Both the position numbers and the translations under genes were made by a program. The notes beneath the pieces were generated by a model that saw nothing but the letters and a program-made list of their open reading frames with translations, was not told where the DNA came from and did no database searches. From NCBI GenBank assembly GCA_051294905.1, contig CM119384.1, positions 4,898,001 through 4,962,000 of the forward strand: a stretch of 64,000 bases of DNA, given 5' to 3'. Each line of letters starts with the position of its first letter. Position 1 is the stretch's first letter. Positions 52,464 through 64,000 of this stretch are shown here, one piece after another. This stretch comes from Botryllus schlosseri (taxonomy: Eukaryota).

Positions 52464-55400
52464 CTAAAATACACAAGTACGGTCAGCGGTGAAGTTATTT
52501 CTACTTTTTTCAATACTCAAGTAGCTTATGTCTACTTCCACTACTTACTAATGCTGCCATACGTCAAACTTTGTATATTATTGTCAAGTAGAAAGTATTT
52601 GGACCACTTGTCAGAGCTAGAACGTGACCAGTGTCCGCCATTAGAGTAAAGATATCTGCAATTATCACGACGCCACAATACGATAGTGGGGAGTTGGAAA
52701 ATCTGCCATTGCTAGACTGAAAATTTCGATATGCTTCTTATAGCTTACAGGCTTACATTTTCATGTTCAAGAATAGCAACGGCTGTAAATTTGGTAAAAA
52801 GTTCTGGAAACAAACACCTTTGAAAAGAACTCTAGGACGGAAGAATATACCGAAACATTTTTATAAACAGCGAAGGGTCACAAGACACATCTCCACTATG
52901 AATACTAGCCTTGACAATGAAGTACCAATCAATATACGTTCAATAGTTTAGTAGTAACTTAATATCTTCGTGGACTCAAGCCGAAGTCATACCCATCCGT
53001 CCAGGTTCTACACCACAGTATAAAGACTGCGTGGAGTATGTGGATCTGTGAGCAAAGAGTGGGAATGGGTAAAACAATGACTGCAATGCCTATTTTATAC
53101 CTAGAAACTATGCTGTAGGATAGGATGGCCGAGATTAACATATGATAGACTTCTACTCACCCATGGCCTACTAAAAACATGGCCATGACTCACCTAAGAT
53201 AAAATCTTGATAGCATATGCTACACACGTCCCTGTCTTGTTCTGGGATGTCATCCACATCCACAACAGCAAGACTCGATATCTTTGAGTTGACAAATCTT
53301 CTGTTATTGAAAGTCTTAATTCCCTCTCGAAACGTTCTGGAAAACATGATTAACTTCTGTATCTTCTGTATCAAAAGTACGACAATCTTGGACGTTCATT
53401 GAGTTCAAATTGCTCGAGTCAAATTCATCCAAGTTCAGTGGCATTGAGATGAAAAGGTGGGTTGCTAGAATGGTGCATCATGTTTTTTTTTCTTACATAA
53501 GAGCAGCACGAATAATTTTTGAGAGGATCTAATTTCAAATAATTTATGACGATGTATCTCTTATACAAGCATCCAATATTGAAAGATGTATGAACTCACC
53601 GGTAGATATTTACGTAGGCATGCATCGTCATCATGACAGCCCGCAGCCAGTTGCTCGATTCAAACATCAGTATGTAAGCCCCATTGATGAACATCACCAG
53701 GCCGCATATGAACTCGATCACGTGACTTATGGAACGTATCCAGAAGACGTAATCGTCCAAATTGATGATACCGTTGGCGTGGTACCTCGAATCCATAACA
53801 TAAAGTGCATACACCATCAACGTTGATAAAACCTATAATTACATGAGAAAATATTAAAGATTTCCAATCGGATATCAGAAATATGAAGCGGACATCTGAA
53901 GCAAGAAGATTTCACGGACTCATTACTAGCACCAGGCACAACGATGTGAATACTCGAATCCGAATCAAGTGGTCGGAGACAATTTTTTCCAATATAGAGT
54001 TATATTATACCTTAGATACCTTCTTGAAACCAAGCAAGTATATCACGGTATCTAAAACACAGCATGAAGCTACAAAAAGACGTGGATATGACATTTCTCA
54101 CGTAGGGTTACCATATTCTGAGATCGGGGAAAGAGGGCACTTTTTACAAATCACAAAACTTATACTAGCGAGGTCATTACGCCAACAGGACTCCCCCGAA
54201 GACCCACTTTAATGTAGTTTTCTAGTCATTCTTGCCGTCAAAATCTGGTATGAGCGTCATTTACAGCGTTTTTTTAGTTGTGCCTGTACTATCACCTGGC
54301 TGTCAGTGCTATAAAGCAGGACGAAGTGTAAAAAAAGAGGATATTTGGGCGTCCTCGGATGGCATTTTCGATTTCTTCAAAAAGGAGGACAATACCTCTT
54401 CGGGGAGGACGTATGCTATGCCTACACTTCTGTGAGGTTGTGATCAACCCTGCAGCATTCTGACCGAGCGCAATGAAATAGGTACCGTACTAAATTATGT
54501 CTAATGTCTTGAATAACTGGCATAATTGCGTCACGATTGCAAAAAATGAAACATATTTGAACTCAAGTTGACTAGTCCTACTCATTACAAGAGCAAAAAT
54601 CACAACAGTAATAGAAAATGCATAGCCTAATAACCAGAGCTTTATTGGCGTCAGACGACATAGCACAGTTTTGGAGTCATTATTATTGATCAGCTAAAAT
54701 CAGAGGCGGTCAGTAACGAAGTATTATACTTTTTCAGAGTAGGCCTACTCAAGTAGGTAATACTATTCACTTAAGCGGTTATGATATTTGACTACTTTTA
54801 GACTTCTTCTTTACAGTAGGCCTATATTGTGCAAAACTAGGCAATACTTGCTTTTAGTCGTACTTGAGTTGAAATTTATGCGTCAATTCTACTTGAGTAC
54901 TAAGAATAACTACTTGACCATATCCGGTCAAAAAACTCCATCTTAATCTCTCACCTTGACCACCAACTCCAGATTAAACGCAGTGAGAGCGATCATCCAT
55001 GTAGACAGACGCTTTGTAGTTAGCAGCCAATAGCACATCCCACTTGGTAACGCCAAAAGAATCAAACATATCAACAACGGGTTCACGTGCTTCCGTAACG
55101 GTATATGACTTTGCGGACTGATAGTCATCAGGACAGGGTGAACGATATCCAGACAAAAGTGAAGAATTGCGGACAGCAACAAAAATGAATTCCTGTACAA
55201 CCGCACGATTCGTTTCCATGGCGGTAGCACACTCAAACGTGTTTGTATCGCTAGAAGGCAAAACAATATGGAGGACATCATTCCCAAAGCCTCTCCTTGA
55301 GCGAGATCATTTCCTCCTATAAACTCGTGTAGCACAGTCCCGGCATAAAATCCAATCACAGACATCGCAGCTCCCACGGAAAACGAGGACAATAATGATT

Positions 55401-57562
55401 CGGTCAGCATAGCGCACATGCCTTCCAATAGAGTTAAATTTTTAGAGTCCTTCCTACTGTCAAAATAACCTTCGATACCGTCCCAATCTTCCCAATATTG
55501 ACTCTGTATCGGTTTGGGATGGTCCGAGCTGAAGAAAAAGTAATATAGTCCACTGTTCGCCGATGGATCATACTCGTCTGTCGTGAAAGACCTATCCTGG
55601 CCGTACAGACTTAGCATTCCCAGTATACAACGGTATATAAAAAAAAGTCTCAACACTGAAGGTACACGGCATTCAACCCACGTATCTTGAATAGCGGTTA
55701 TGAAATCGTCCAACACGGCTTCATATCCGTTCCTTCTGAGAAAGAACAGGTGAGCCAGACCTGGCCGTATCTCGTCTGCTTTCTTCACGAATAAAATCAA
55801 CACCGGTAGCTCCGATATTAAAATTACGAAGTTCAATATCCACGTGGAATCGGTCAGCATGAGCGACCACGCGGGACTTGTGTATAAGATTGCTGACAGC
55901 GGCGACAACGCTTCGTCCAAAAGCACCAAAATCAGCCAGTGACACACTTGTAGCGCGGCGAAGCACAAGGCTACTTTTGCGGTAAAATCGAGCTGAAGAG
56001 AAATATTTATGAGGTTTTAAAGCGGATAAACCATACAGTATCAAATTCATCCTGTAGGATAAAAATCTCTAATTTAAAAACTATAATCCCCCCTCAACGT
56101 TCAAATTTCAAGTTTACTAACACCGATGCCTGGGTATTTGTTTTATACCAAATATGGTCAATTTGATCAGACATTCAAGTAGGCACCACAGTACTTTTCA
56201 TTCTGAATGCTAATAGGATGGCATACTACATAGGCAAATACTATACCGACAATATAGTATAGAGGTAGAGGTAGATCATCTGGCTTCTTGTTTGATAAGT
56301 AACATATTCGAAACCCAGCCAAAGACTCCAGAATTGGTATTCCCTGTTCATTACTTCCCCACTACGTGGTAGACAATCTAGGATAGTGTGGTGCGGGTAA
56401 ACGATGGTGCTGACTCGAATATGCTCCTTCGAATCTCCATCATCCAAACAACTTCGACTCGTGCAGTTATCAGTATTTTTATGATAGTTTAAGTTACTGC
56501 TTTTAAACACTCCTAATTGAATGAATGGGGAAAAAAATAAGCCACAGCAAACTTTGGTAGTAGACCAATGTAAATAGAGCCTATCATTCGAAAAATCTCC
56601 CTGCGTCAAATCTACACAAGGAAAGTTTGAGTAAATACATGCAGACATCAAACGATGGAATATTTTTCAACCCACCTCACTGGGCACCAACATCTCATTG
56701 TTCCACATATTTTTCATAATAATGGATATCGCAGGTTGAGTATGATTCTGTTCACCGTAGTAATGTCCATGTATTACGTTGATTGTCGAGAAGTTCCATC
56801 CTATTGCTGCTAGGCTCAAAGTCACCGCTGCAAGGAGCCGGTATAGCTTCGAAATTATACCAGGCTCACAGGTGAAGACGCAAATGCAAAGAATTCCAAC
56901 TGTTGACAAATGAAGTACATTTAAACTAAGTTAGGGACCAGCATGTTCCATCAAAATACAAGTGGAGAATAATCATGCGAGATAGTGTAATGGTTATGCG
57001 TCCAGCTTCTCGATCGGTAGGTCGTGGGTTCAATCCCCGTCCGGGTCAGACCAAAGACTCTAAAACTGGTATCCGCGGCTATCCAGCTAGGCGCTCAGCA
57101 TCCATGGGTAGCGTGGAGGAGAAAAATACGGTGGTGCAGACTAGATGACCTTGCTTAAAGGTCGTATCGCATCTCCATCGTCAAAGCATCTCGATGGTGC
57201 CGGCGAAAATAAATCTGATCTCTCTCTCTCTCTCTCTCATGCAGCAGTTGAATTGGCGAAATTAGTAAGCCCTATGAGAGCTGCCTGTAATTTCCCAAGT
57301 TTGTTATTTTTGTTACTTGCTCGCCTTGCTATAATCCTATAGTTTTTATGATGGCGATGAATTACGTTCTAGCTGATAAGTGTATTTTTTAGCTACACAC
57401 ACACCTTTTAATATTCTACTTACGTATAACATTGATCATATATCCGGTGTAGCCATCAGGTTCCCAAACGCCCACATATTGTATCGAGATTCTATCGGAT
57501 AGGATTCCATCAAAAGCCACCAAGATCGGCAGGCGCAGCAGATCAGCCTTTATAAACCCCAT
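52327..57562 (-). CDS. RNF139: RNF139/TRC8-family (RNF139/RNF145) multi-pass ER membrane RING-H2 E3 ubiquitin ligase, 637 aa, 6 coding exons
   Basis: Exons 57562-57424, 56899-56676, 55992-54955, 53832-53600, 53336-53194, 52463-52327 (1914 bp, all GT..AG, phases compatible). Motifs LLRLPILVAFDGIL, QDTWVECRVPSVLRLF, LDDYVFWIRS, MHAYVNIY, RING-H2 CSIC...CRHMFHTHCLRKWIFIQDTCPMC. RNF139 versus RNF145 not formally resolved. Confidence 0.93.
53162..53187. mobile_element. P-element-like excision footprint (26 bp), TSD ACTCACC = duplicated RNF139 splice donor
   Basis: ACTCACC-CATGGCCTACTAAAAACATGGCCATG-ACTCACC. Confidence 0.8.
54955..55992 (-). CDS. RNF139: RNF139 large exon, TRC8 N-terminal transmembrane (sterol-sensing-like) domain
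   Basis: 1038 bp open frame, many hydrophobic segments, ctcttcag acceptor, AAG|GTGAGA donor. Confidence 0.95.
56979..57236 (+). mobile_element. tRNA-derived SINE in RNF139 intron 1 (antisense), TSD TCATGC
   Basis: Collinear with the 16382-16632 copy; A/B boxes; (CT)n tail. Confidence 0.88.
57424..57562 (-). CDS. RNF139: RNF139 coding exon 1 (MGFIKADLLRLP...; not in ORF track)
   Basis: ATG at 57562, C|GTAAGT donor, resembles TRC8 N-terminal ALRVPCLYIIDAIF. Confidence 0.85.
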
Positions 57563-58878
57563 TTTAGATACCAACGGCTTGATACCGGGGGGGCTTAAAT
57601 GTAAATTATCTTCCTATTACCATGCTTCATTGAGATAATTCCGTTGAGATTCACAATTTCTTGAATATTCTTAAAATTTGCAGGAAGAAGATGACTGATT
57701 GGCGATTATGCATATGGATAAGTGTACTGTTTCGCTTGGCTGCTCATCGAAAAAAATATCATTGACATTCGTCCTTAAGATAAAATTGTTCTGTCAGTTC
57801 CACGTTCGATTTATTAGTAATTTTGATCAGTTCAATACACCACAAAAATTGCGATGCAATGAAATGATAGGAAGATGTCAAAACGACTTGGAGTAGTATT
57901 TGAAATCAAACACCCACCTTAGCCTAGTCTAGGCGATGTGGAGAAGAGGCATGCACTGCACACTGAATGAAAAATAAAAGAAGAAATATAGAAAAGCAAG
58001 AGACAAAAATGAGGTAGCATGTCACGGAAGGCGAGATCGATAGGTCAGGTTGCGGTCCGGTAATCCCAATGATATATCATATCATATATCATTGGGTAAT
58101 CCTGAGGAGGGACTAGTATTCATTTTGGTAGAAATTGCTTGTATTTCGACTTGAATGTGGACAACTGGACATGCGATCGTCGACTATCGGATAGCCGACC
58201 AGTGTGCCAAAACTGATCCGCAAATCCTAATACGCACGTTGGTATTTAATAAATTATTCACCGCCATCGACGCGGGACAATCCTGCTTGAATCTCGACAG
58301 GAGCACGTTTCGGCGTGTGGAGTGTTTATCTGGGGTGGTCCGCACCTACATCGCTGTTCTTGCGACATCTTTACAGGACAAAAAGAAGAATACAAGGAAA
58401 GCGAATGAGATTTGCAACTAATAGCGTTTGAAAATAGAGACATGCGAAAGATCGAGGTGGGTCAGCACTCGAGATTACCTACAATCTTTTCATCGTCAAC
58501 CAACCAATCAGTTTTATAAATATTTTCATCATTTCTAAACACCACAATACTCCGATTCAATGAAAAGATAGCTAGGTGTCTAAACGACTTGTAGTAGTCT
58601 TCGAGATCAAACACCCAAATCGGGTGGTGTTTTGAAAGGATGAAATGATTAAAAACAAACTCAACTGACTGCACTTTCATAAATAGGGCCTACTCGTCAG
58701 CGCTCGAACGTGGCATCATATTTTTCTCAATTGTTCTTTTATGTTATCTTCAAATTCTATTCATTCAGTGTACACTGTGCAGTGCATGCTTCTTCTATGC
58801 TTGTACCAGAGTGTACTCTGCTCTCAGTGTACACTCTTGCTTCAACACTATTAATATCATCCTGATCGATATATCCGA

Positions 58879-60730: not shown

Positions 60731-61450
60731 TTTTAGACTTTTCAAGGCTAATAACTATATAGAGCCCGAGGGATACCGAATGCTACATCTTCACTGACAA
60801 CCCGGATATATTCAGTAGATATGGCATCTAACAGTTCCGAAAAATACTACATAGCACTTATTGAACCAGCTTTACTGCTGCAGGTATTTCGATGCTTGTA
60901 CAATGTACATGAAATAAACTAGAATGGTTGCATCTATTCTGAACACTAAAGAGATAGATCAATATTCCTAGTCTAGCAGTCACAGATTATCTCAGACTCT
61001 CCCTACGCCATGTTGTTTAGTCACAAAATTTGACGATATTTTTTACCTCTAACAGCCGATACTGATATTGTTTTCAAAGTTTGATATCAACCTGACATTA
61101 CCAGCAAACGGATAAATTGGCCGGGCTGTTTGAGTCAGTGTACCAGTTTGACTCGAGTGCGATCAGACTAGTTGACCTTCACGGTCGTATCGATCATTCC
61201 TATTTGATACCGAATACTGTGCATGCATATTTTCTGTACCACCATCATTGCCGTCTGTTTTCTATGTCTTTGGGTGTAAATAAAGACTCTCTCTCTATTG
61301 TAACACCCACCCCATCCGGAAAGCTAAAAATCGCCAGAAGCAGTTCACTTGCTCACCAGCTCGCAAAATTTAATATATGGTAACAAAAACGAATCTGAAA
61401 CATGATTTGAACCACAACGAATGAGGAAAAACTTGAAAATATGCCCAAAA

Positions 61451-63907
61451 TTAGTCGAAATAGTCGTGCACGCCGGCGTTTTTAAGTATATTATCTAAAA
61501 CTTGCTTTTCCAGTTTTAAAAAGTGTCCCATGTCTATGCCTTCCGCTGCCAACTTTCGAGAAACAGTGCAGAGTGCATCAAGAACCTTCACATTGGGAGG
61601 AAGCATGTCCGAGGTCTCACGATCGATGACCTTGGGTTTATTATCATCGAAATTACATAATGTAGATTTGGGAGTATGGACATTTGTTTGAACATCATAT
61701 TTTCGTTGAGGGGCCTTCTCAATCTTATGATTTTCAGAGGTATTTTGAGAGCCTAGCACCTCTCCAGCATCTGTGATAACATCTGGACAGGGAGTATTTG
61801 TTCCTACTGATTTGGAGCGGACATGGTTTGCTTTGAATCTCTGGGACGTTTCTTCAGAAGTATTTTGAGAGCCTGGCACCTCTGCGGTAACATCTCGACA
61901 GGGAGTATTTGTTCTTACTGATTTGGAGCGGACATGGTTTGCTTTGAATCCCTGGGACGTTTCTTCAGAAGTATTTTGAGAGCCTGGCACCTCTGAGGTA
62001 ACATCTCGACAGGGAGTATTTGTTCTTACTGATTTGGAGCGGACATGGTTTGCTTTGAATCCCTGGGACGTTTCTTCAGAAGTATTTTGAGAGCCTGGCA
62101 CCTCTGCGGTAACATCTCGACAGGGAGTATTTGTTCTTACTGATTTGGAGCGGACATGGTTTGCTTTGAATCCCTGGGACGTTCGACGCGTCAAAACCAC
62201 TGTATTTACGCCTGTAGGTGAACGTGGCGAGAGTTTGATGCGTTTTGCCGGCGGTCCTGTATGTCGCCATTTTTCAAAATCAGGTACTTCGACCCGTAGG
62301 TTTTTCTTGCAGGCGTGCAAACCGCAGCGTGTTCTCCATTGCTTCACCCAATCCAGACTTAGATGTGTACCCTTGAAACCTTTTGCAAAATATTGTGCTT
62401 TCTCCAATAAAGTGTGATTATCCACATCAGATTTTTCAAGTCTAGATATATTGTACCAAGTGAGTAAATACACATCCAAATTGTCATATCTGTTCGCTGC
62501 CAGTAAATTCAACCGGTGTTCCCAAATACCTGCGACTGTCTCTTGAGAAATTCCGTAAAACAGAGCGATTTCAGAGTATGTTTTCTCTTTCTTGTAAAGT
62601 TCCTTTAGAACATGAGTGCATTCGTACAGCGACGTCATTTGTAAAGTCTGTAGTGTTTTCCGCGTCATTCTTTCTCTTTTAGCGATGCGAGCCACATCTG
62701 ACCTTCGAATTTTAAAATTACTGGCAATGTCATTAAAGTTAACTTTTTTTTCCATCTCTTCCTTAATAACAGCCAGGTCAGATGGCGACAAAATTACTGT
62801 GTCCTGCAAACCAAACTTTTCCTTCCAACAATTTGGGAAATCGTCAGGTGGTTCGTAATCGTCATAACATAGTATTTCCGCAAAATGACGCGCCATTTCC
62901 AGTAGAGCTCCAGCACAAACGACCTGTCCCGCAGATGCGGGACCGTTGTACCACGCCAACAGCGCGCGATCGAGATCGGAAATTTGTTGTTTGCTATGGA
63001 TTTTAGTCCCAAAATTGCAAAGTTCAAGTTTCTCCTGCAAAAGCATCCTGGCGCATTCTCCGTTTTTCAAATTGGCACCGACTGAGGATGGAACGATAGG
63101 ATTACTGTCTTGTGACGTATATTTGGTCGATATAACTTTGAGTGTCTCACTTTTCGTATTCTTGGACTTGTTGGTTTTCGTTTTAGGACTAACTACAACC
63201 TTGCCATGAAAAAGTCCGTATTTAATTGTCGGGCCGCCCACAATTGAAGGAATTTTGTGACGTTTCCGCCAAATATTGAACCACTTCTTTGGAGGATAAA
63301 AATCACCGTAATTTAAATATCCTACGAATTCACTCACTTTTTCTTCAAGTCGTGTGTGGTCAATGCAAACTTGTGTGCGTTTTATTTTATTAAACCAAGT
63401 CAATAACGCATCGTCGATTATCGCAAGCCGTTTCTCTGATCTGAGTTTGTCACGGACGTTCCATTCGCAAGTTTTCTGACGATCTTTTGTCAAGCAAGCG
63501 GCACAGCTCAAATCGCTATCGGAGATTTCGAGAAAGGAAGAATTTGGTTTCTCGCTCTCAATTACTTCTGTCATTTGAGACGGTCGAGGACAGGCTAAAC
63601 TGATTCCGTGGCGTTTGCGCCAACGTTGATACCAACCCTTTTTCAGATTCAACCCATCCAACTTCATATCTTTGATGAGTTTCTCTGTCTCAAGCTTCAA
63701 CGTTTTGATATCAGGACGAATGTTTTTGCCATGCTTGGCGCCATTGTACCATGACCATAAAGCATCACCGAGCTGTTTATGATGATCGCTCGAAATGTGA
63801 GAGTTTGATGCCATTTTTTTTTTCGACTTCAACTTGCATACCGGTCTTTTTTTTCTTGAGACTTTGTCGGGCGGTTTCTTGGAGGGCATCTCGCGCTTAA
63901 CAGCCAT
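61451..63907 (-). CDS. Intronless CENP-B/Tigger(pogo)-derived DNA-binding protein, 818 aa: four CENP-B/Tc5-type HTH domains, two psq-like HTH, no DDE domain
   Basis: Four repeats of LDxALLxWYN...L.EKA..F......W...W..RHGI-like motif; psq-like NFNDIASNFKIRRSDVARI and TYSEIALFYGISQETVAGI; C-terminal VKVLDALCTV...LKLEKQV resembles the Tigger/CENP-B tail; no DETG/DN/QPLDQG catalytic motifs seen. Confidence 0.85.
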   Translation of the reverse strand: MAVKREMPSKKPPDKVSRKKRPVCKLKSKKKMASNSHISSDHHKQLGDALWSWYNGAKHGKNIRPDIKTLKLETEKLIKDMKLDGLNLKKGWYQRWRKRHGISLACPRPSQMTEVIESEKPNSSFLEISDSDLSCAACLTKDRQKTCEWNVRDKLRSEKRLAIIDDALLTWFNKIKRTQVCIDHTRLEEKVSEFVGYLNYGDFYPPKKWFNIWRKRHKIPSIVGGPTIKYGLFHGKVVVSPKTKTNKSKNTKSETLKVISTKYTSQDSNPIVPSSVGANLKNGECARMLLQEKLELCNFGTKIHSKQQISDLDRALLAWYNGPASAGQVVCAGALLEMARHFAEILCYDDYEPPDDFPNCWKEKFGLQDTVILSPSDLAVIKEEMEKKVNFNDIASNFKIRRSDVARIAKRERMTRKTLQTLQMTSLYECTHVLKELYKKEKTYSEIALFYGISQETVAGIWEHRLNLLAANRYDNLDVYLLTWYNISRLEKSDVDNHTLLEKAQYFAKGFKGTHLSLDWVKQWRTRCGLHACKKNLRVEVPDFEKWRHTGPPAKRIKLSPRSPTGVNTVVLTRRTSQGFKANHVRSKSVRTNTPCRDVTAEVPGSQNTSEETSQGFKANHVRSKSVRTNTPCRDVTSEVPGSQNTSEETSQGFKANHVRSKSVRTNTPCRDVTAEVPGSQNTSEETSQRFKANHVRSKSVGTNTPCPDVITDAGEVLGSQNTSENHKIEKAPQRKYDVQTNVHTPKSTLCNFDDNKPKVIDRETSDMLPPNVKVLDALCTVSRKLAAEGIDMGHFLKLEKQVLDNILKNAGVHDYFD
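61733..62182 (-). repeat. Coding tandem repeat, 111-bp (37-aa) unit x4
   Basis: Units 62182-62072, 62071-61961 and 61960-61850 nearly identical; fourth unit diverged with a 6-bp insertion. Confidence 0.97.
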
Positions 63908-64000
63908 AGATATTATCCAAACGTAAACGAATACTTGATAAGGTATCTTACAATGTCAAATATATATTACCATTTCCGGCAGCTGACCTGATAGAAAAAA

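What the first reader, a model, noticed from the sequence alone, without database searches (positions are those of the whole stretch)
61451..63907. Domesticated pogo/Tigger-derived protein with multiplied DNA-binding domains and no catalytic core
Seen: an intact 2.46-kb ORF with four CENP-B-type HTH domains, two psq-like HTH, a basic PPAKRIKL segment and a Tigger-like C-terminus, but no DDE/DDD domain. No TIR was noticed downstream; only 93 bp upstream are visible. Established: CENP-B, JRK and TIGD genes are recurrent pogo domestications that normally have one HTH pair plus a DDE-like domain. Inference: a lineage-specific chromatin, centromere or transposon-repressor protein with unusual architecture.
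Basis: partly seen in the sequence, partly recalled or inferred. Interest (0 to 1): 0.7.

Follow-up and report, generated by a model that had tools for sequence, protein, structure and literature searches.

The report
Pogo transposase relic with multiplied DNA-binding domains
This intact 818-residue gene is what is left of a pogo-type "jumping gene" enzyme after it lost its cutting core, kept both ends and multiplied its DNA-gripping modules; it belongs to a four-copy family that selection has kept open, but whether it is expressed and what DNA it binds are still unknown.

Summary
Window 61451-63907 (minus strand) is an intact 818-aa intronless ORF with:
- four Tc5/CENP-B-type HTH domains and two psq-like HTHs;
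- a conserved PPAKRIKL motif;
- no DDE domain and no terminal inverted repeats (TIRs).

A 111-bp tandem repeat (3.7 copies, 97% identical) encodes 37-aa units. The basic N-terminus is a frameshifted relic of a further psq HTH.

The "Tigger-like C-terminus" is real. Residues 754-817 are 42% identical to the C-terminus of a TIR-flanked, multi-copy pogo transposase from another organism (P0078). That match includes a degenerate copy of its terminal PCNA-binding (PIP) box. So this is a pogo transposase with the catalytic core deleted and the DNA-binding part multiplied.

The genome holds only four copies: three intact and one broken, 53-74% identical. Evidence of constraint:
- dN/dS is about 0.5 (bootstrap 95% intervals 0.38-0.64).
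- ORF survival under neutrality is at most 0.002.
- Polymorphism pN/pS is about 0.3.

Two RNA runs gave no convincing reads, no orthologue is available, and function is untested.

DBD-only pogo domestication is already known (Drosophila cag). DDE-less proteins with several such HTH units also exist as uncharacterised predictions in shrimp, oyster and fish. I rate this a new variant of a known kind, of moderate interest.

The parts
61451..63907 (-). Intact intronless ORF, 818 aa (stop codon included)
   Evidence: It is present with substitutions only in another individual's contigs.
63776..63907 (-). Basic, lysine-rich N-terminal segment (aa 1-44). It is a frameshifted relic of a first psq-type HTH.
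   Evidence: The DNA aligns with the psq-coding part of paralogue B, but the psq-like reading lies in another frame. A-runs are present. pI 10.7.
63596..63775 (-). Tc5/CENP-B-type HTH 1 (aa 45-104)
   Evidence: Pfam PF03221, 27.6 bits.
63434..63532 (-). Conserved inter-domain block (aa 126-158): ISDSDLSCAACL plus a third invariant Cys and W.VRD. Function unknown.
   Evidence: These columns are invariant across the three intact paralogues.
63245..63421 (-). Tc5/CENP-B-type HTH 2 (aa 163-221)
   Evidence: Pfam PF03221, 26.9 bits. 36% identical to the P0078 Tc5 domain.
62807..62980 (-). Tc5/CENP-B-type HTH 3 (aa 310-367), divergent, with its recognition-helix motif changed
   Evidence: Self-alignment; alignment to P0078. 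Lowest regional dN/dS, 0.26.
62648..62788 (-). psq-like HTH 1 (aa 374-420)
   Evidence: Predicted three-helix unit; aligns with psq-like HTH 2. Pfam support is sub-threshold only.
62495..62647 (-). psq-like HTH 2 (aa 421-471), paired with HTH 4 as a CENP-B-type bipartite DNA-binding unit
   Evidence: The unit aa 409-527 is 28% identical to P0078 aa 6-132.
62315..62482 (-). Tc5/CENP-B-type HTH 4 (aa 476-531)
   Evidence: Pfam PF03221, 17.6 bits on a clipped piece. Model pLDDT 82.5, top match 1HLV.
62231..62254 (-). PPAKRIKL motif (aa 552-559), NLS-like
   Evidence: Conserved in the paralogues as PPAKRIK / PPSKRIR. The nuclear-localisation function is inferred.
61770..62183 (-). 111-bp tandem repeat, 3.7 copies, 97% identical. 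It encodes 37-aa Ser/Thr/Gln-rich units (aa 576-712) where the DDE core would sit. Predicted disordered.
   Evidence: The paralogues carry a single unit.
61481..61648 (-). C-terminal two-helix domain (aa 754-809), inherited from the transposase C-terminus
   Evidence: 42% identical to P0078 aa 439-504, pairwise E 4e-10. Helices at 771-788 and 793-810. Found only in the four paralogues of this genome.
61457..61480 (-). PIP-box-like tail NAGVHDYF (aa 810-817)
   Evidence: It aligns with the canonical terminal PIP box QTTISQYF of P0078. PCNA binding was not tested.
61367..61450 (-). Conserved 3' untranslated stretch ending at an ATTAAA signal (61369-61374)
   Evidence: Homology with paralogue B ends here. 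B has ATTAAA and C has AATAAA at the same place.
63943..64000 (-). Start of a ~350-bp upstream region shared with paralogue B. It runs about 290 bp beyond the window's end.
   Evidence: 69-77% identity, A versus B, with a sharp outer boundary and no TIR.

Best explanation
This is a stationary, low-copy gene family descended from a pogo-superfamily transposase.

Shown:
- The central DDE catalytic core has been lost and both ends of the transposase kept.
- The N-terminal CENP-B-type DNA-binding module has been multiplied. This copy has four Tc5-type and two psq-type HTHs, plus a further psq HTH destroyed by a frameshift.
- The C-terminal two-helix domain and a degenerate PIP-box tail remain.
- The protein has no catalytic domain and no terminal repeats, so it cannot move itself.

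Inferred:
- It works as a multivalent, sequence-specific DNA-binding protein whose HTH array reads a long or reiterated site.
- The most plausible targets are the termini of the related pogo element family still present in this genome, or other repeats.
- The disordered repeat linker and the C-terminal domain would serve partner binding or self-association.
- The protein would act as a transposon repressor or a chromatin tether.

Selection has kept the frame open, but constraint is only moderate and expression is unproven.
For: Origin and architecture:
- Pfam and alignment show 4 Tc5 HTHs and 2 psq-like HTHs, with no DDE_1 hit.
- psq2+H4 folds confidently. Its best structural match is the CENP-B DNA-binding domain 1HLV.
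- The family profile hits 1HLV at 1.7e-27.
- The C-terminus is 42% identical to that of P0078. P0078 is a 505-aa CENP-B_N+Tc5+DDE_1 transposase with 141 member sequences, sitting in a 2.2-kb element with 33-nt TIRs.

Not a mobile element:
- Four loci only in 495 Mb.
- No TIRs at the ORF or at the edges of the unit shared by the paralogues.
- The window copy is only about 20-24% identical to the sampled resident DDE-bearing pogo ORFs.

Constraint:
- dN/dS is 0.47-0.50, with bootstrap 95% intervals 0.38-0.64.
- Probability that the frame stays open under neutral substitution is <=0.002.
- Against another individual there are 7 synonymous and 8 non-synonymous differences and no indel. pN/pS is 0.31, binomial p=0.026.
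- The paralogues share an upstream region and a 3' end with a poly(A) signal.

Possible targets:
- At least 72 sites of the type TA|CAGTCGACTCCGCTTAATTC occur in the genome (reversed-pattern control: 0). In five sampled copies, homology starts exactly at TA|CAGT.
- One such locus carries a fragment of the related resident transposase.

Precedent:
- Drosophila cag is a pogo derivative that lost the DDE by internal deletion (PMC4231638).
- A recently domesticated DDE-less Tc1/mariner gene has dN/dS 0.7 (PMC13548663).
Against: - Two bulk RNA runs gave no convincing reads. Only about 700 aligned bases fell on the ORF in one run and none in the other, and every laid read fitted only in part.
- dN/dS near 0.5 is weak constraint.
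- One paralogue is broken. This copy has lost its first psq HTH by frameshift. Paralogues B and C have a degenerate first Tc5 recognition helix and have lost the PIP-like tail.
- The 97%-identical tandem repeat shows the linker is in flux.
- No orthologue was found in 1.84 billion representative proteins, so neither age nor synteny can be shown.
- No TIR-like site lies in the window or near the paralogues.
- The DNA-binding unit is only 28% identical to that of P0078, so its target may be quite different.
- DNA binding, nuclear localisation, self-association and PCNA binding are all untested.
Confidence: 0.55

Rival explanations
1. A dying relic. The four copies are old internal-deletion derivatives of a pogo element, or duplicates of one. 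They no longer serve the host or a transposon and are on the way to becoming pseudogenes.
For: - No convincing RNA reads in two runs.
- One copy already carries stops.
- Domains have decayed differently in each copy: frameshifted psq in A, degenerate helix in B and C, lost tail in B and C.
- The tandem repeat expanded recently.
- The surroundings are repeat-rich.
- Internal deletion of the DDE is common in pogo elements (PMC4231638).
Against: - Three ORFs of 738-1048 aa remain open at dS 0.3-0.7. Simulated neutral survival is <=0.002.
- dN/dS intervals exclude 1.
- Polymorphism shows an excess of synonymous change.
- The non-coding upstream and 3' ends are conserved between paralogues.
Confidence: 0.25
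2. Still part of a selfish unit. It would be a DDE-less regulator or repressor encoded by a non-autonomous element. That element would be copied by RNA-mediated retroposition or moved in trans by a resident pogo transposase.
For: - Paralogue homology is confined to a discrete unit: about 385 bp upstream, the ORF, and about 85 bp downstream ending at a poly(A) signal, with sharp edges.
- The copies are intronless and lie on two chromosomes.
- DDE-bearing pogo elements and their termini are present in the genome.
Against: - No TIRs or TA-flanked ends at the unit's edges.
- Only four copies, 26-47% divergent in protein.
- No poly(A) tail or target duplication is recognisable.
- No TIR motif within the loci fetched around the copies.
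Confidence: 0.08
3. A CENP-B analogue. The HTH array binds a satellite or centromeric repeat and organises centromeric or heterochromatic chromatin.
For: - The DNA-binding fold is of the CENP-B type.
- CENP-B-related proteins have arisen repeatedly from pogo (PMC4231638).
- A ~225-bp interspersed repeat clusters around three of the paralogues.
Against: - No CENP-B_dimeris or DDE-like domain.
- No data on centromeres in this genome.
- The clustered repeat is dispersed (>=3901 candidate sites), not a satellite.
- Very low or absent expression in the runs sampled does not fit a constitutive centromere protein.
Confidence: 0.07

Closest known systems
Drosophila CAG (CG12346), a pogo-derived CENP-B-related protein
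   Same: - Pogo-derived, with a CENP-B_N/psq plus HTH_Tnp_Tc5 DNA-binding module.
- The DDE domain was lost by internal deletion and the transposase C-terminal region retained.
- No TIRs (PMC4231638; PMC13548663).
   Different: - CAG has one DNA-binding unit in 225 aa. Here there are four Tc5 and two psq HTHs in 818 aa, plus a tandem-repeat linker.
- CAG has orthologues, synteny, expression, dN/dS 0.08 and lethal alleles. None of these is shown here, and dN/dS is about 0.5.
P0078-type pogo transposase (505 aa; CENP-B_N + HTH_Tnp_Tc5 + DDE_1; TIR-flanked 2.2-kb element in another organism)
   Same: - The psq+Tc5 unit is 28% identical.
- The C-terminal two-helix domain with terminal (Y)F tail is 42% identical.
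   Different: - P0078 has an intact DDE_1 domain, a canonical PIP box (QTTISQYF), 33-nt TIRs and many copies.
- The window gene has none of these.
Mammalian CENP-B and the TIGD/JRK genes
   Same: - Pogo-derived host genes with the same bipartite DNA-binding fold.
   Different: - All twelve vertebrate pogo-derived genes keep the DDE domain and one DNA-binding module (PMC7386202).
- CENP-B also has a CENP-B_dimeris domain, which is not detected here.
Uncharacterised predicted DDE-less multi-HTH proteins: Penaeus LOC113825437 (818 aa, 3 Tc5 stretches plus CENP-B_N), Saccostrea XP_061180799, Myxocyprinus LOC127419445 (5 Tc5 HTHs)
   Same: - Several Tc5-type HTH domains, in shrimp and oyster with CENP-B_N as well, and no DDE_1 hit.
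- The shrimp protein also ends in a loosely similar C-terminal segment.
   Different: - Only distant similarity (E 1e-13 or weaker to the family profile).
- These are probably independent multiplications, and none has a known function.
Pipsqueak, Pax paired domain and Myb-type tandem HTH arrays
   Same: - Working principle: several HTH units in a row read an extended or repeated DNA site.
- The Pax paired domain, the Tc3 DNA-binding domain and the Brinker DNA-binding domain appear among the structural neighbours.
   Different: - Different families. This is a resemblance in mode of action only.

Membership tests
Autonomous pogo-superfamily transposon | CENP-B_N/psq plus HTH_Tnp_Tc5 DNA-binding module | tested here: met
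   PF03221 scores 63.9 bits. The psq part is weak by sequence but supported by fold and by alignment to P0078.
Autonomous pogo-superfamily transposon | DDE_1 catalytic domain | tested here: not met
   No DDE_1 hit at E<=10 on the whole protein or on pieces. Nothing aligns to the DDE region of P0078.
Autonomous pogo-superfamily transposon | Terminal inverted repeats with TA target duplication | tested here: not met
   No credible inverted repeat flanks the ORF or the unit shared with paralogue B. The family's TIR motif is absent from the window and from the paralogue loci.
Autonomous pogo-superfamily transposon | Many dispersed, similar copies | tested here: not met
   Four loci only, 53-74% identical in protein.
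Domesticated transposase gene (criteria of Feschotte & Pritham as listed in PMC4231638) | No transposon hallmarks, and similarity to a transposase | tested here: met
Domesticated transposase gene (criteria of Feschotte & Pritham as listed in PMC4231638) | Intact coding capacity under functional constraint | tested here: met
   Between paralogues only. dN/dS is 0.47-0.50 with intervals below 1, neutral ORF survival is <=0.002, and pN/pS is 0.31. The constraint is moderate.
Domesticated transposase gene (criteria of Feschotte & Pritham as listed in PMC4231638) | Orthologues at syntenic positions in related species | not testable with these tools
   No relative's genome is reachable. There is no orthologue in the protein collections.
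Domesticated transposase gene (criteria of Feschotte & Pritham as listed in PMC4231638) | Expression | tested here: inconclusive
   Two RNA runs, sampled at 6% and 13%, gave no convincing reads. Contigs of a small run of unrecorded kind cover parts of the ORF.
CENP-B proper | Bipartite CENP-B DNA-binding fold | tested here: met
   1HLV is the top structural match for aa 415-540. The family profile hits 1HLV at 1.7e-27.
CENP-B proper | DDE-like central domain and CENP-B_dimeris C-terminal domain | tested here: not met
   Neither Pfam family is hit.
CENP-B proper | Binding to a centromeric satellite box | not testable with these tools
   Needs ChIP or DAP-seq and a centromere map.
CAG-type DBD-only pogo derivative | DNA-binding module and C-terminal region kept, DDE lost by internal deletion | tested here: met
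   Both ends align to P0078, the middle does not.
CAG-type DBD-only pogo derivative | PCNA-binding C-terminus | tested here: inconclusive
   NAGVHDYF keeps PIP-box positions 4, 7 and 8 but has N for Q at position 1. About a third of confirmed PCNA-binding motifs lack Q (PMC6881253). Binding was not tested. Paralogues B and C lack the tail.
CAG-type DBD-only pogo derivative | Single DNA-binding unit | tested here: not met
   Six HTHs in this copy and up to ten in paralogue B.

The most novel reading that the evidence does not exclude
The multiplied HTH array is a purpose-built reader of the termini of the resident pogo/MITE family (TA|CAGTCGACTCCGCTTAATTC, at least 72 sites) or of another dispersed repeat. 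The retained transposase tail would tether it to PCNA. The family would then be a replication-coupled, host-encoded transposon repressor or repeat-chromatin organiser, and each paralogue would have a different working set of HTHs, giving different target specificity.
Probability: 0.15. Interest if true: 0.65.

Novelty: new variant of a known kind. Interest (0 to 1): 0.42.

Why it matters
Domestication of the DNA-binding part of pogo and Tc1/mariner transposases is known, but the described cases keep one binding module. Here the module has been multiplied. Both ends of the parent transposase can still be recognised, and three paralogues carry different sets of intact HTHs. That makes a small natural series for asking how a transposase DNA-binding domain is rebuilt into a multivalent DNA reader. 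It also allows a test of whether such proteins still recognise the ends of their parent elements. Similar multi-HTH, DDE-less proteins in shrimp, oyster and fish suggest the route is recurrent and unstudied. Without expression or binding data it remains a candidate, not a demonstrated host function.

Tried and rejected
- **Whole-protein word-index search and C-terminal-region search:** no hits. The tool only sees proteins of similar length, so these blanks say little.
- **ESM Atlas search of the C-terminal 84 aa:** best score 0.78, uninformative.
- **Whole-protein AlphaFold2 with a 3-sequence alignment:** mean pLDDT 39.9. I used it only for secondary structure.
- **Homodimer prediction of the C-terminal 62 aa:** no verdict (score 0.01, fold pLDDT about 42, controls not run). 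This is neither for nor against self-association.
- **Direct PDB sequence search with the whole protein:** only marginal (1HLV, E 0.77). A family profile was needed.
- **Inverted copies of a ~225-bp repeat as termini of a larger element:** they flank both copy A and copy B, and I considered this reading. I rejected it because the spacing differs, nothing between the repeats and the gene unit is homologous, and the repeat has >=3901 candidate sites genome-wide.
- **Error in my first flank comparison:** it used a region of copy A that lacked 999 bases. I rebuilt the region and repeated the comparison. Only the corrected coordinates are used in this report.
- **Possible splice acceptor about 80 bp upstream of the ATG:** it is conserved in paralogue B, but no spliced read or contig was seen. 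It stays a lead only.
- **Partner TIRs:** I searched within 1.5 kb of four genomic TIR-like sites and found none. The full structure of those elements is unresolved.
Full report
**1. The observation**

Window 61451-63907 holds an intact 818-aa ORF on the minus strand with an ATG start. The rest of the window has only one other ORF of 200 aa or more. That ORF is an exon-like piece of an RNF139/TRC8 gene. The genome is 495 Mb in 219 contigs, and the window is C14:4898001-4962000.

*Tc5-type HTH domains.* Pfam finds HTH_Tnp_Tc5 at 63.9 bits in three stretches, and no DDE family even at E<=10.
- Cut into pieces, H1 (aa 45-104) and H2 (163-221) each pass the curated cut-off.
- H4 (476-531) scores 17.6 bits on a piece that I clipped.
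- H3 (310-367) gets no Pfam hit. It aligns with the other three on a common pattern and aligns to the Tc5 domain of a bona fide transposase. Tc5-bearing proteins also match it in the profile search.

*psq-like HTHs.* The two units (374-420 and 421-471) are weak by sequence. Both are predicted as three-helix units.
- With a 22-sequence alignment, aa 415-540 folds at mean pLDDT 82.5.
- Its best match in the PDB is the CENP-B DNA-binding domain bound to DNA, 1HLV. Foldseek gives E 3.6e-3, probability 1.00, 121 columns. VIA gives Z 7.8 over 111 residues, rmsd 9.7.
- The next neighbours are the Brinker, Tc3 and Pax bipartite domains.
- The global TM-score is low because the two subdomains are placed differently without DNA. 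The structural scores are middling on their own.
- The profile of the same alignment hits 1HLV at 1.7e-27 by sequence.

- A 111-bp tandem repeat of 3.7 copies, 97% identical, lies at 61770-62183. It encodes 37-aa Ser/Thr/Gln-rich units, sits where a DDE core would be, and is predicted disordered.
- The lysine-rich N-terminus is a wreck of a further psq HTH. The DNA aligns with the psq-coding part of a paralogue, but the psq-like reading is in another frame, next to runs of A.

**2. Copy number and paralogues**

A six-frame search of the whole genome finds the protein at four loci only:
- this one (A);
- an intact 1048-aa ORF on C11 at 28.37 Mb (B), in which the first ~330 aa are duplicated internally;
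- an intact 738-aa ORF on C11 at 28.466 Mb (C);
- a broken copy with stops directly upstream of C (D).

A is 53% identical to B and C. C and the matching part of B are 74% identical. The paralogues differ in which HTHs look intact:
- B and C keep the first psq that A lost.
- B and C have a degenerate recognition helix in their first Tc5 domain, which A keeps.
- B and C have lost the last few residues through a frame change.

**3. Is it a transposon?**

No inverted repeat flanks the ORF. After I corrected an error in my first flank comparison (see Tried and rejected), A and B share a discrete unit:
- about 350-385 bp upstream of the start codon, at 69-77% identity;
- the ORF;
- about 85 bp downstream, ending at an ATTAAA signal. 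C has AATAAA at the same place.

The edges of this unit are sharp and carry no TIR. A discrete unit running from an upstream boundary to a poly(A) signal, with no introns, would fit RNA-mediated copying. It would equally fit conservation of promoter and UTR after DNA duplication. I cannot tell which.

The genome does hold many DDE-bearing pogo elements: 72 DDE_1 matches, many with open frames of 500-640 aa. The window protein is only about 20-24% identical to the ones sampled.

**4. Where it came from**

The profile of the three paralogues, run against 1.84 billion representative proteins, found only 48 hits. The best was 5.6e-19 and none looked like an orthologue. The exact sequences are not in the 15-billion-protein collection.

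Two short hits (P0002, P0006) share the C-terminal motif. Searching with P0002 led to P0078 and P0079, which are 505-aa proteins with CENP-B_N, HTH_Tnp_Tc5 and DDE_1. P0078 stands for 141 sequences. It lies in a 2.2-kb element with 33-nt TIRs that begin TACAGT.

Comparison of the window protein with P0078:
- Window aa 754-817 align with the last 66 residues of P0078 at 42% identity (pairwise E 4e-10).
- P0078 ends in a canonical PIP box, QTTISQYF. The window protein ends NAGVHDYF followed by one residue.
- The psq2+H4 unit aligns with the N-terminus of P0078 at 28% identity.
- Each of the four Tc5 domains aligns with the single Tc5 domain of P0078.
- Nothing aligns with the DDE part of P0078.

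So the gene is a pogo transposase with its core removed, both ends kept and the HTHs multiplied. The four Tc5 units are 21-32% identical to each other and 25-34% to P0078. The order of duplications therefore cannot be resolved.

Within this genome the C-terminal domain profile hits only the four paralogues. The one resident P0078-like ORF (C4:18.7 Mb, 38% identical) has a recognisable but divergent version of the domain.

**5. Selection**

- Pairwise dN/dS is 0.47-0.50 by NG86 and 0.56-0.73 by YN00, at dS 0.3-0.7.
- Bootstrap 95% intervals on the NG86 values are 0.38-0.64.
- In substitution-only simulations at half the observed divergence, the frame stayed open in 0 of 1000 runs (A-C) and 2 of 1000 runs (C-B).
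- Contigs of a DNA run from another individual cover most of the ORF with substitutions only. Of the 15 listed differences, 7 are synonymous and 8 are not. That gives pN/pS 0.31 and a one-sided binomial p of 0.026. The list is partial.
- This is moderate purifying selection. [quoted passage not shown] Drosophila cag has 0.08 (PMC4231638).

**6. Expression**

I laid two bulk RNA runs of the same species label on the locus, reading 6% and 13% of each.
- One run gave about 700 aligned bases on the ORF and the other gave none.
- Every laid read fitted only in part.
- The deep coverage lies on the flanking repeats.
- Contigs of a small run whose kind is not on record cover parts of the ORF. I do not count them as RNA.

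Expression is therefore unproven. It is not excluded for tissues or stages that were not sampled.

**7. Possible targets**

The TIR of the P0078 family suggested a pattern to search for.
- The genome has 72 matches, against 0 for the reversed control. Their consensus is CAGTCGACTCCGCTTAATTC.
- In five sampled copies at four loci, homology begins exactly at TA|CAGT, as expected for pogo ends.
- One such locus carries a fragment of the resident P0078-like transposase.
- I found no partner ends within 1.5 kb.
- No such site lies in the window or near the paralogues.

That these sites are the protein's targets is inference only.

**8. Comparison with what is known**

- All twelve vertebrate pogo-derived genes keep the DDE domain and one DNA-binding module (PMC7386202).
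- Drosophila cag is the described DBD-only case, explained by internal deletion (PMC4231638).
- A 2026 screen treats DBD-only co-option as one of two routes of Tc1/mariner domestication (PMC13548663).
- CENPB-type factors are reported as expanded in molluscs and other invertebrates (PMC10027918).
- I found no paper describing tandem arrays of CENP-B-type domains without a DDE.
- Such proteins do exist as uncharacterised predictions in Penaeus, Saccostrea and Myxocyprinus. Of the 48 profile hits, 42 lack DDE_1, although many of these are short fragments.

**9. Verdict**

The architecture and the pogo origin are secure. The gene is not a mobile element by any test available here, and it has been kept open by selection. 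Whether it is a working host gene is likely but not shown (0.55). The main rival is a slowly decaying relic (0.25). It is a new variant of a known kind of domestication and is of moderate interest.

Noticed in passing
window 57798-58030 and 58513-58617; also C14:4963518-4964658; L015/L018 (C11 28.366 and 28.375 Mb); L016 (C11 28.465 Mb): A ~225-bp interspersed repeat, about 84% identical between copies, has >=3901 candidate sites genome-wide. It occurs 6, 3 and 1 times within about 20 kb of paralogues A, B and C, but not in the first 57 kb of the window. This is either local repeat richness or a real association.
   Followed up: partly
genome-wide, e.g. L037 1508, L038 1507, L039 1560, L040 1569: At least 72 pogo-type termini TA|CAGTCGACTCCGCTTAATTC (control 0). 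They share the motif with the TIRs of the P0078 element and with MITEs around P0006 in other organisms. No partner ends were found within 1.5 kb.
   Followed up: partly
G000:C4:18717603-18719063 (L024/L030): An intact 526-550-aa P0078-like ORF with DDE_1 (149.7 bits), 38% identical to P0078. It is apparently single-copy and has no TIR motif within 1.5 kb. It may be a second, DDE-retaining domestication.
   Followed up: no
L003 385-3531 (C11:28370577-28373723): Paralogue B has an internal duplication of the first ~330 aa (psq-Tc5-Tc5-linker). That gives up to six Tc5-type and four psq-type HTHs in one 1048-aa ORF.
   Followed up: partly
window 63434-63532 (aa 126-158): An invariant ISDSDLSCAACL block, with a third invariant cysteine and W.VRD, lies between HTH 1 and HTH 2. 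It recalls a phospho-regulated SUMO-interaction motif or a small metal-binding site (my recollection, not tested).
   Followed up: no
window 61770-62183: Each 37-aa repeat unit carries two SQ dipeptides, giving about eight in 150 aa. This is an SQ/TQ-cluster-like composition (my reading, not tested). Short-read contigs of another individual break at this repeat, so copy-number variation could not be read.
   Followed up: no
window 54943-55968 (-): A 341-aa ORF with a TRC8_N domain (E 1.1e-39) is a large exon of an RNF139/TRC8 gene, the nearest ordinary host gene downstream.
   Followed up: partly
L014 1672-2201, 5092-5621, 7851-8537 (another organism's contig): Three ~510-690-bp MITE-like inverted-repeat pairs with the same TIR motif surround the DDE-less single-unit protein P0006, which itself has no flanking TIRs.
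   Followed up: partly
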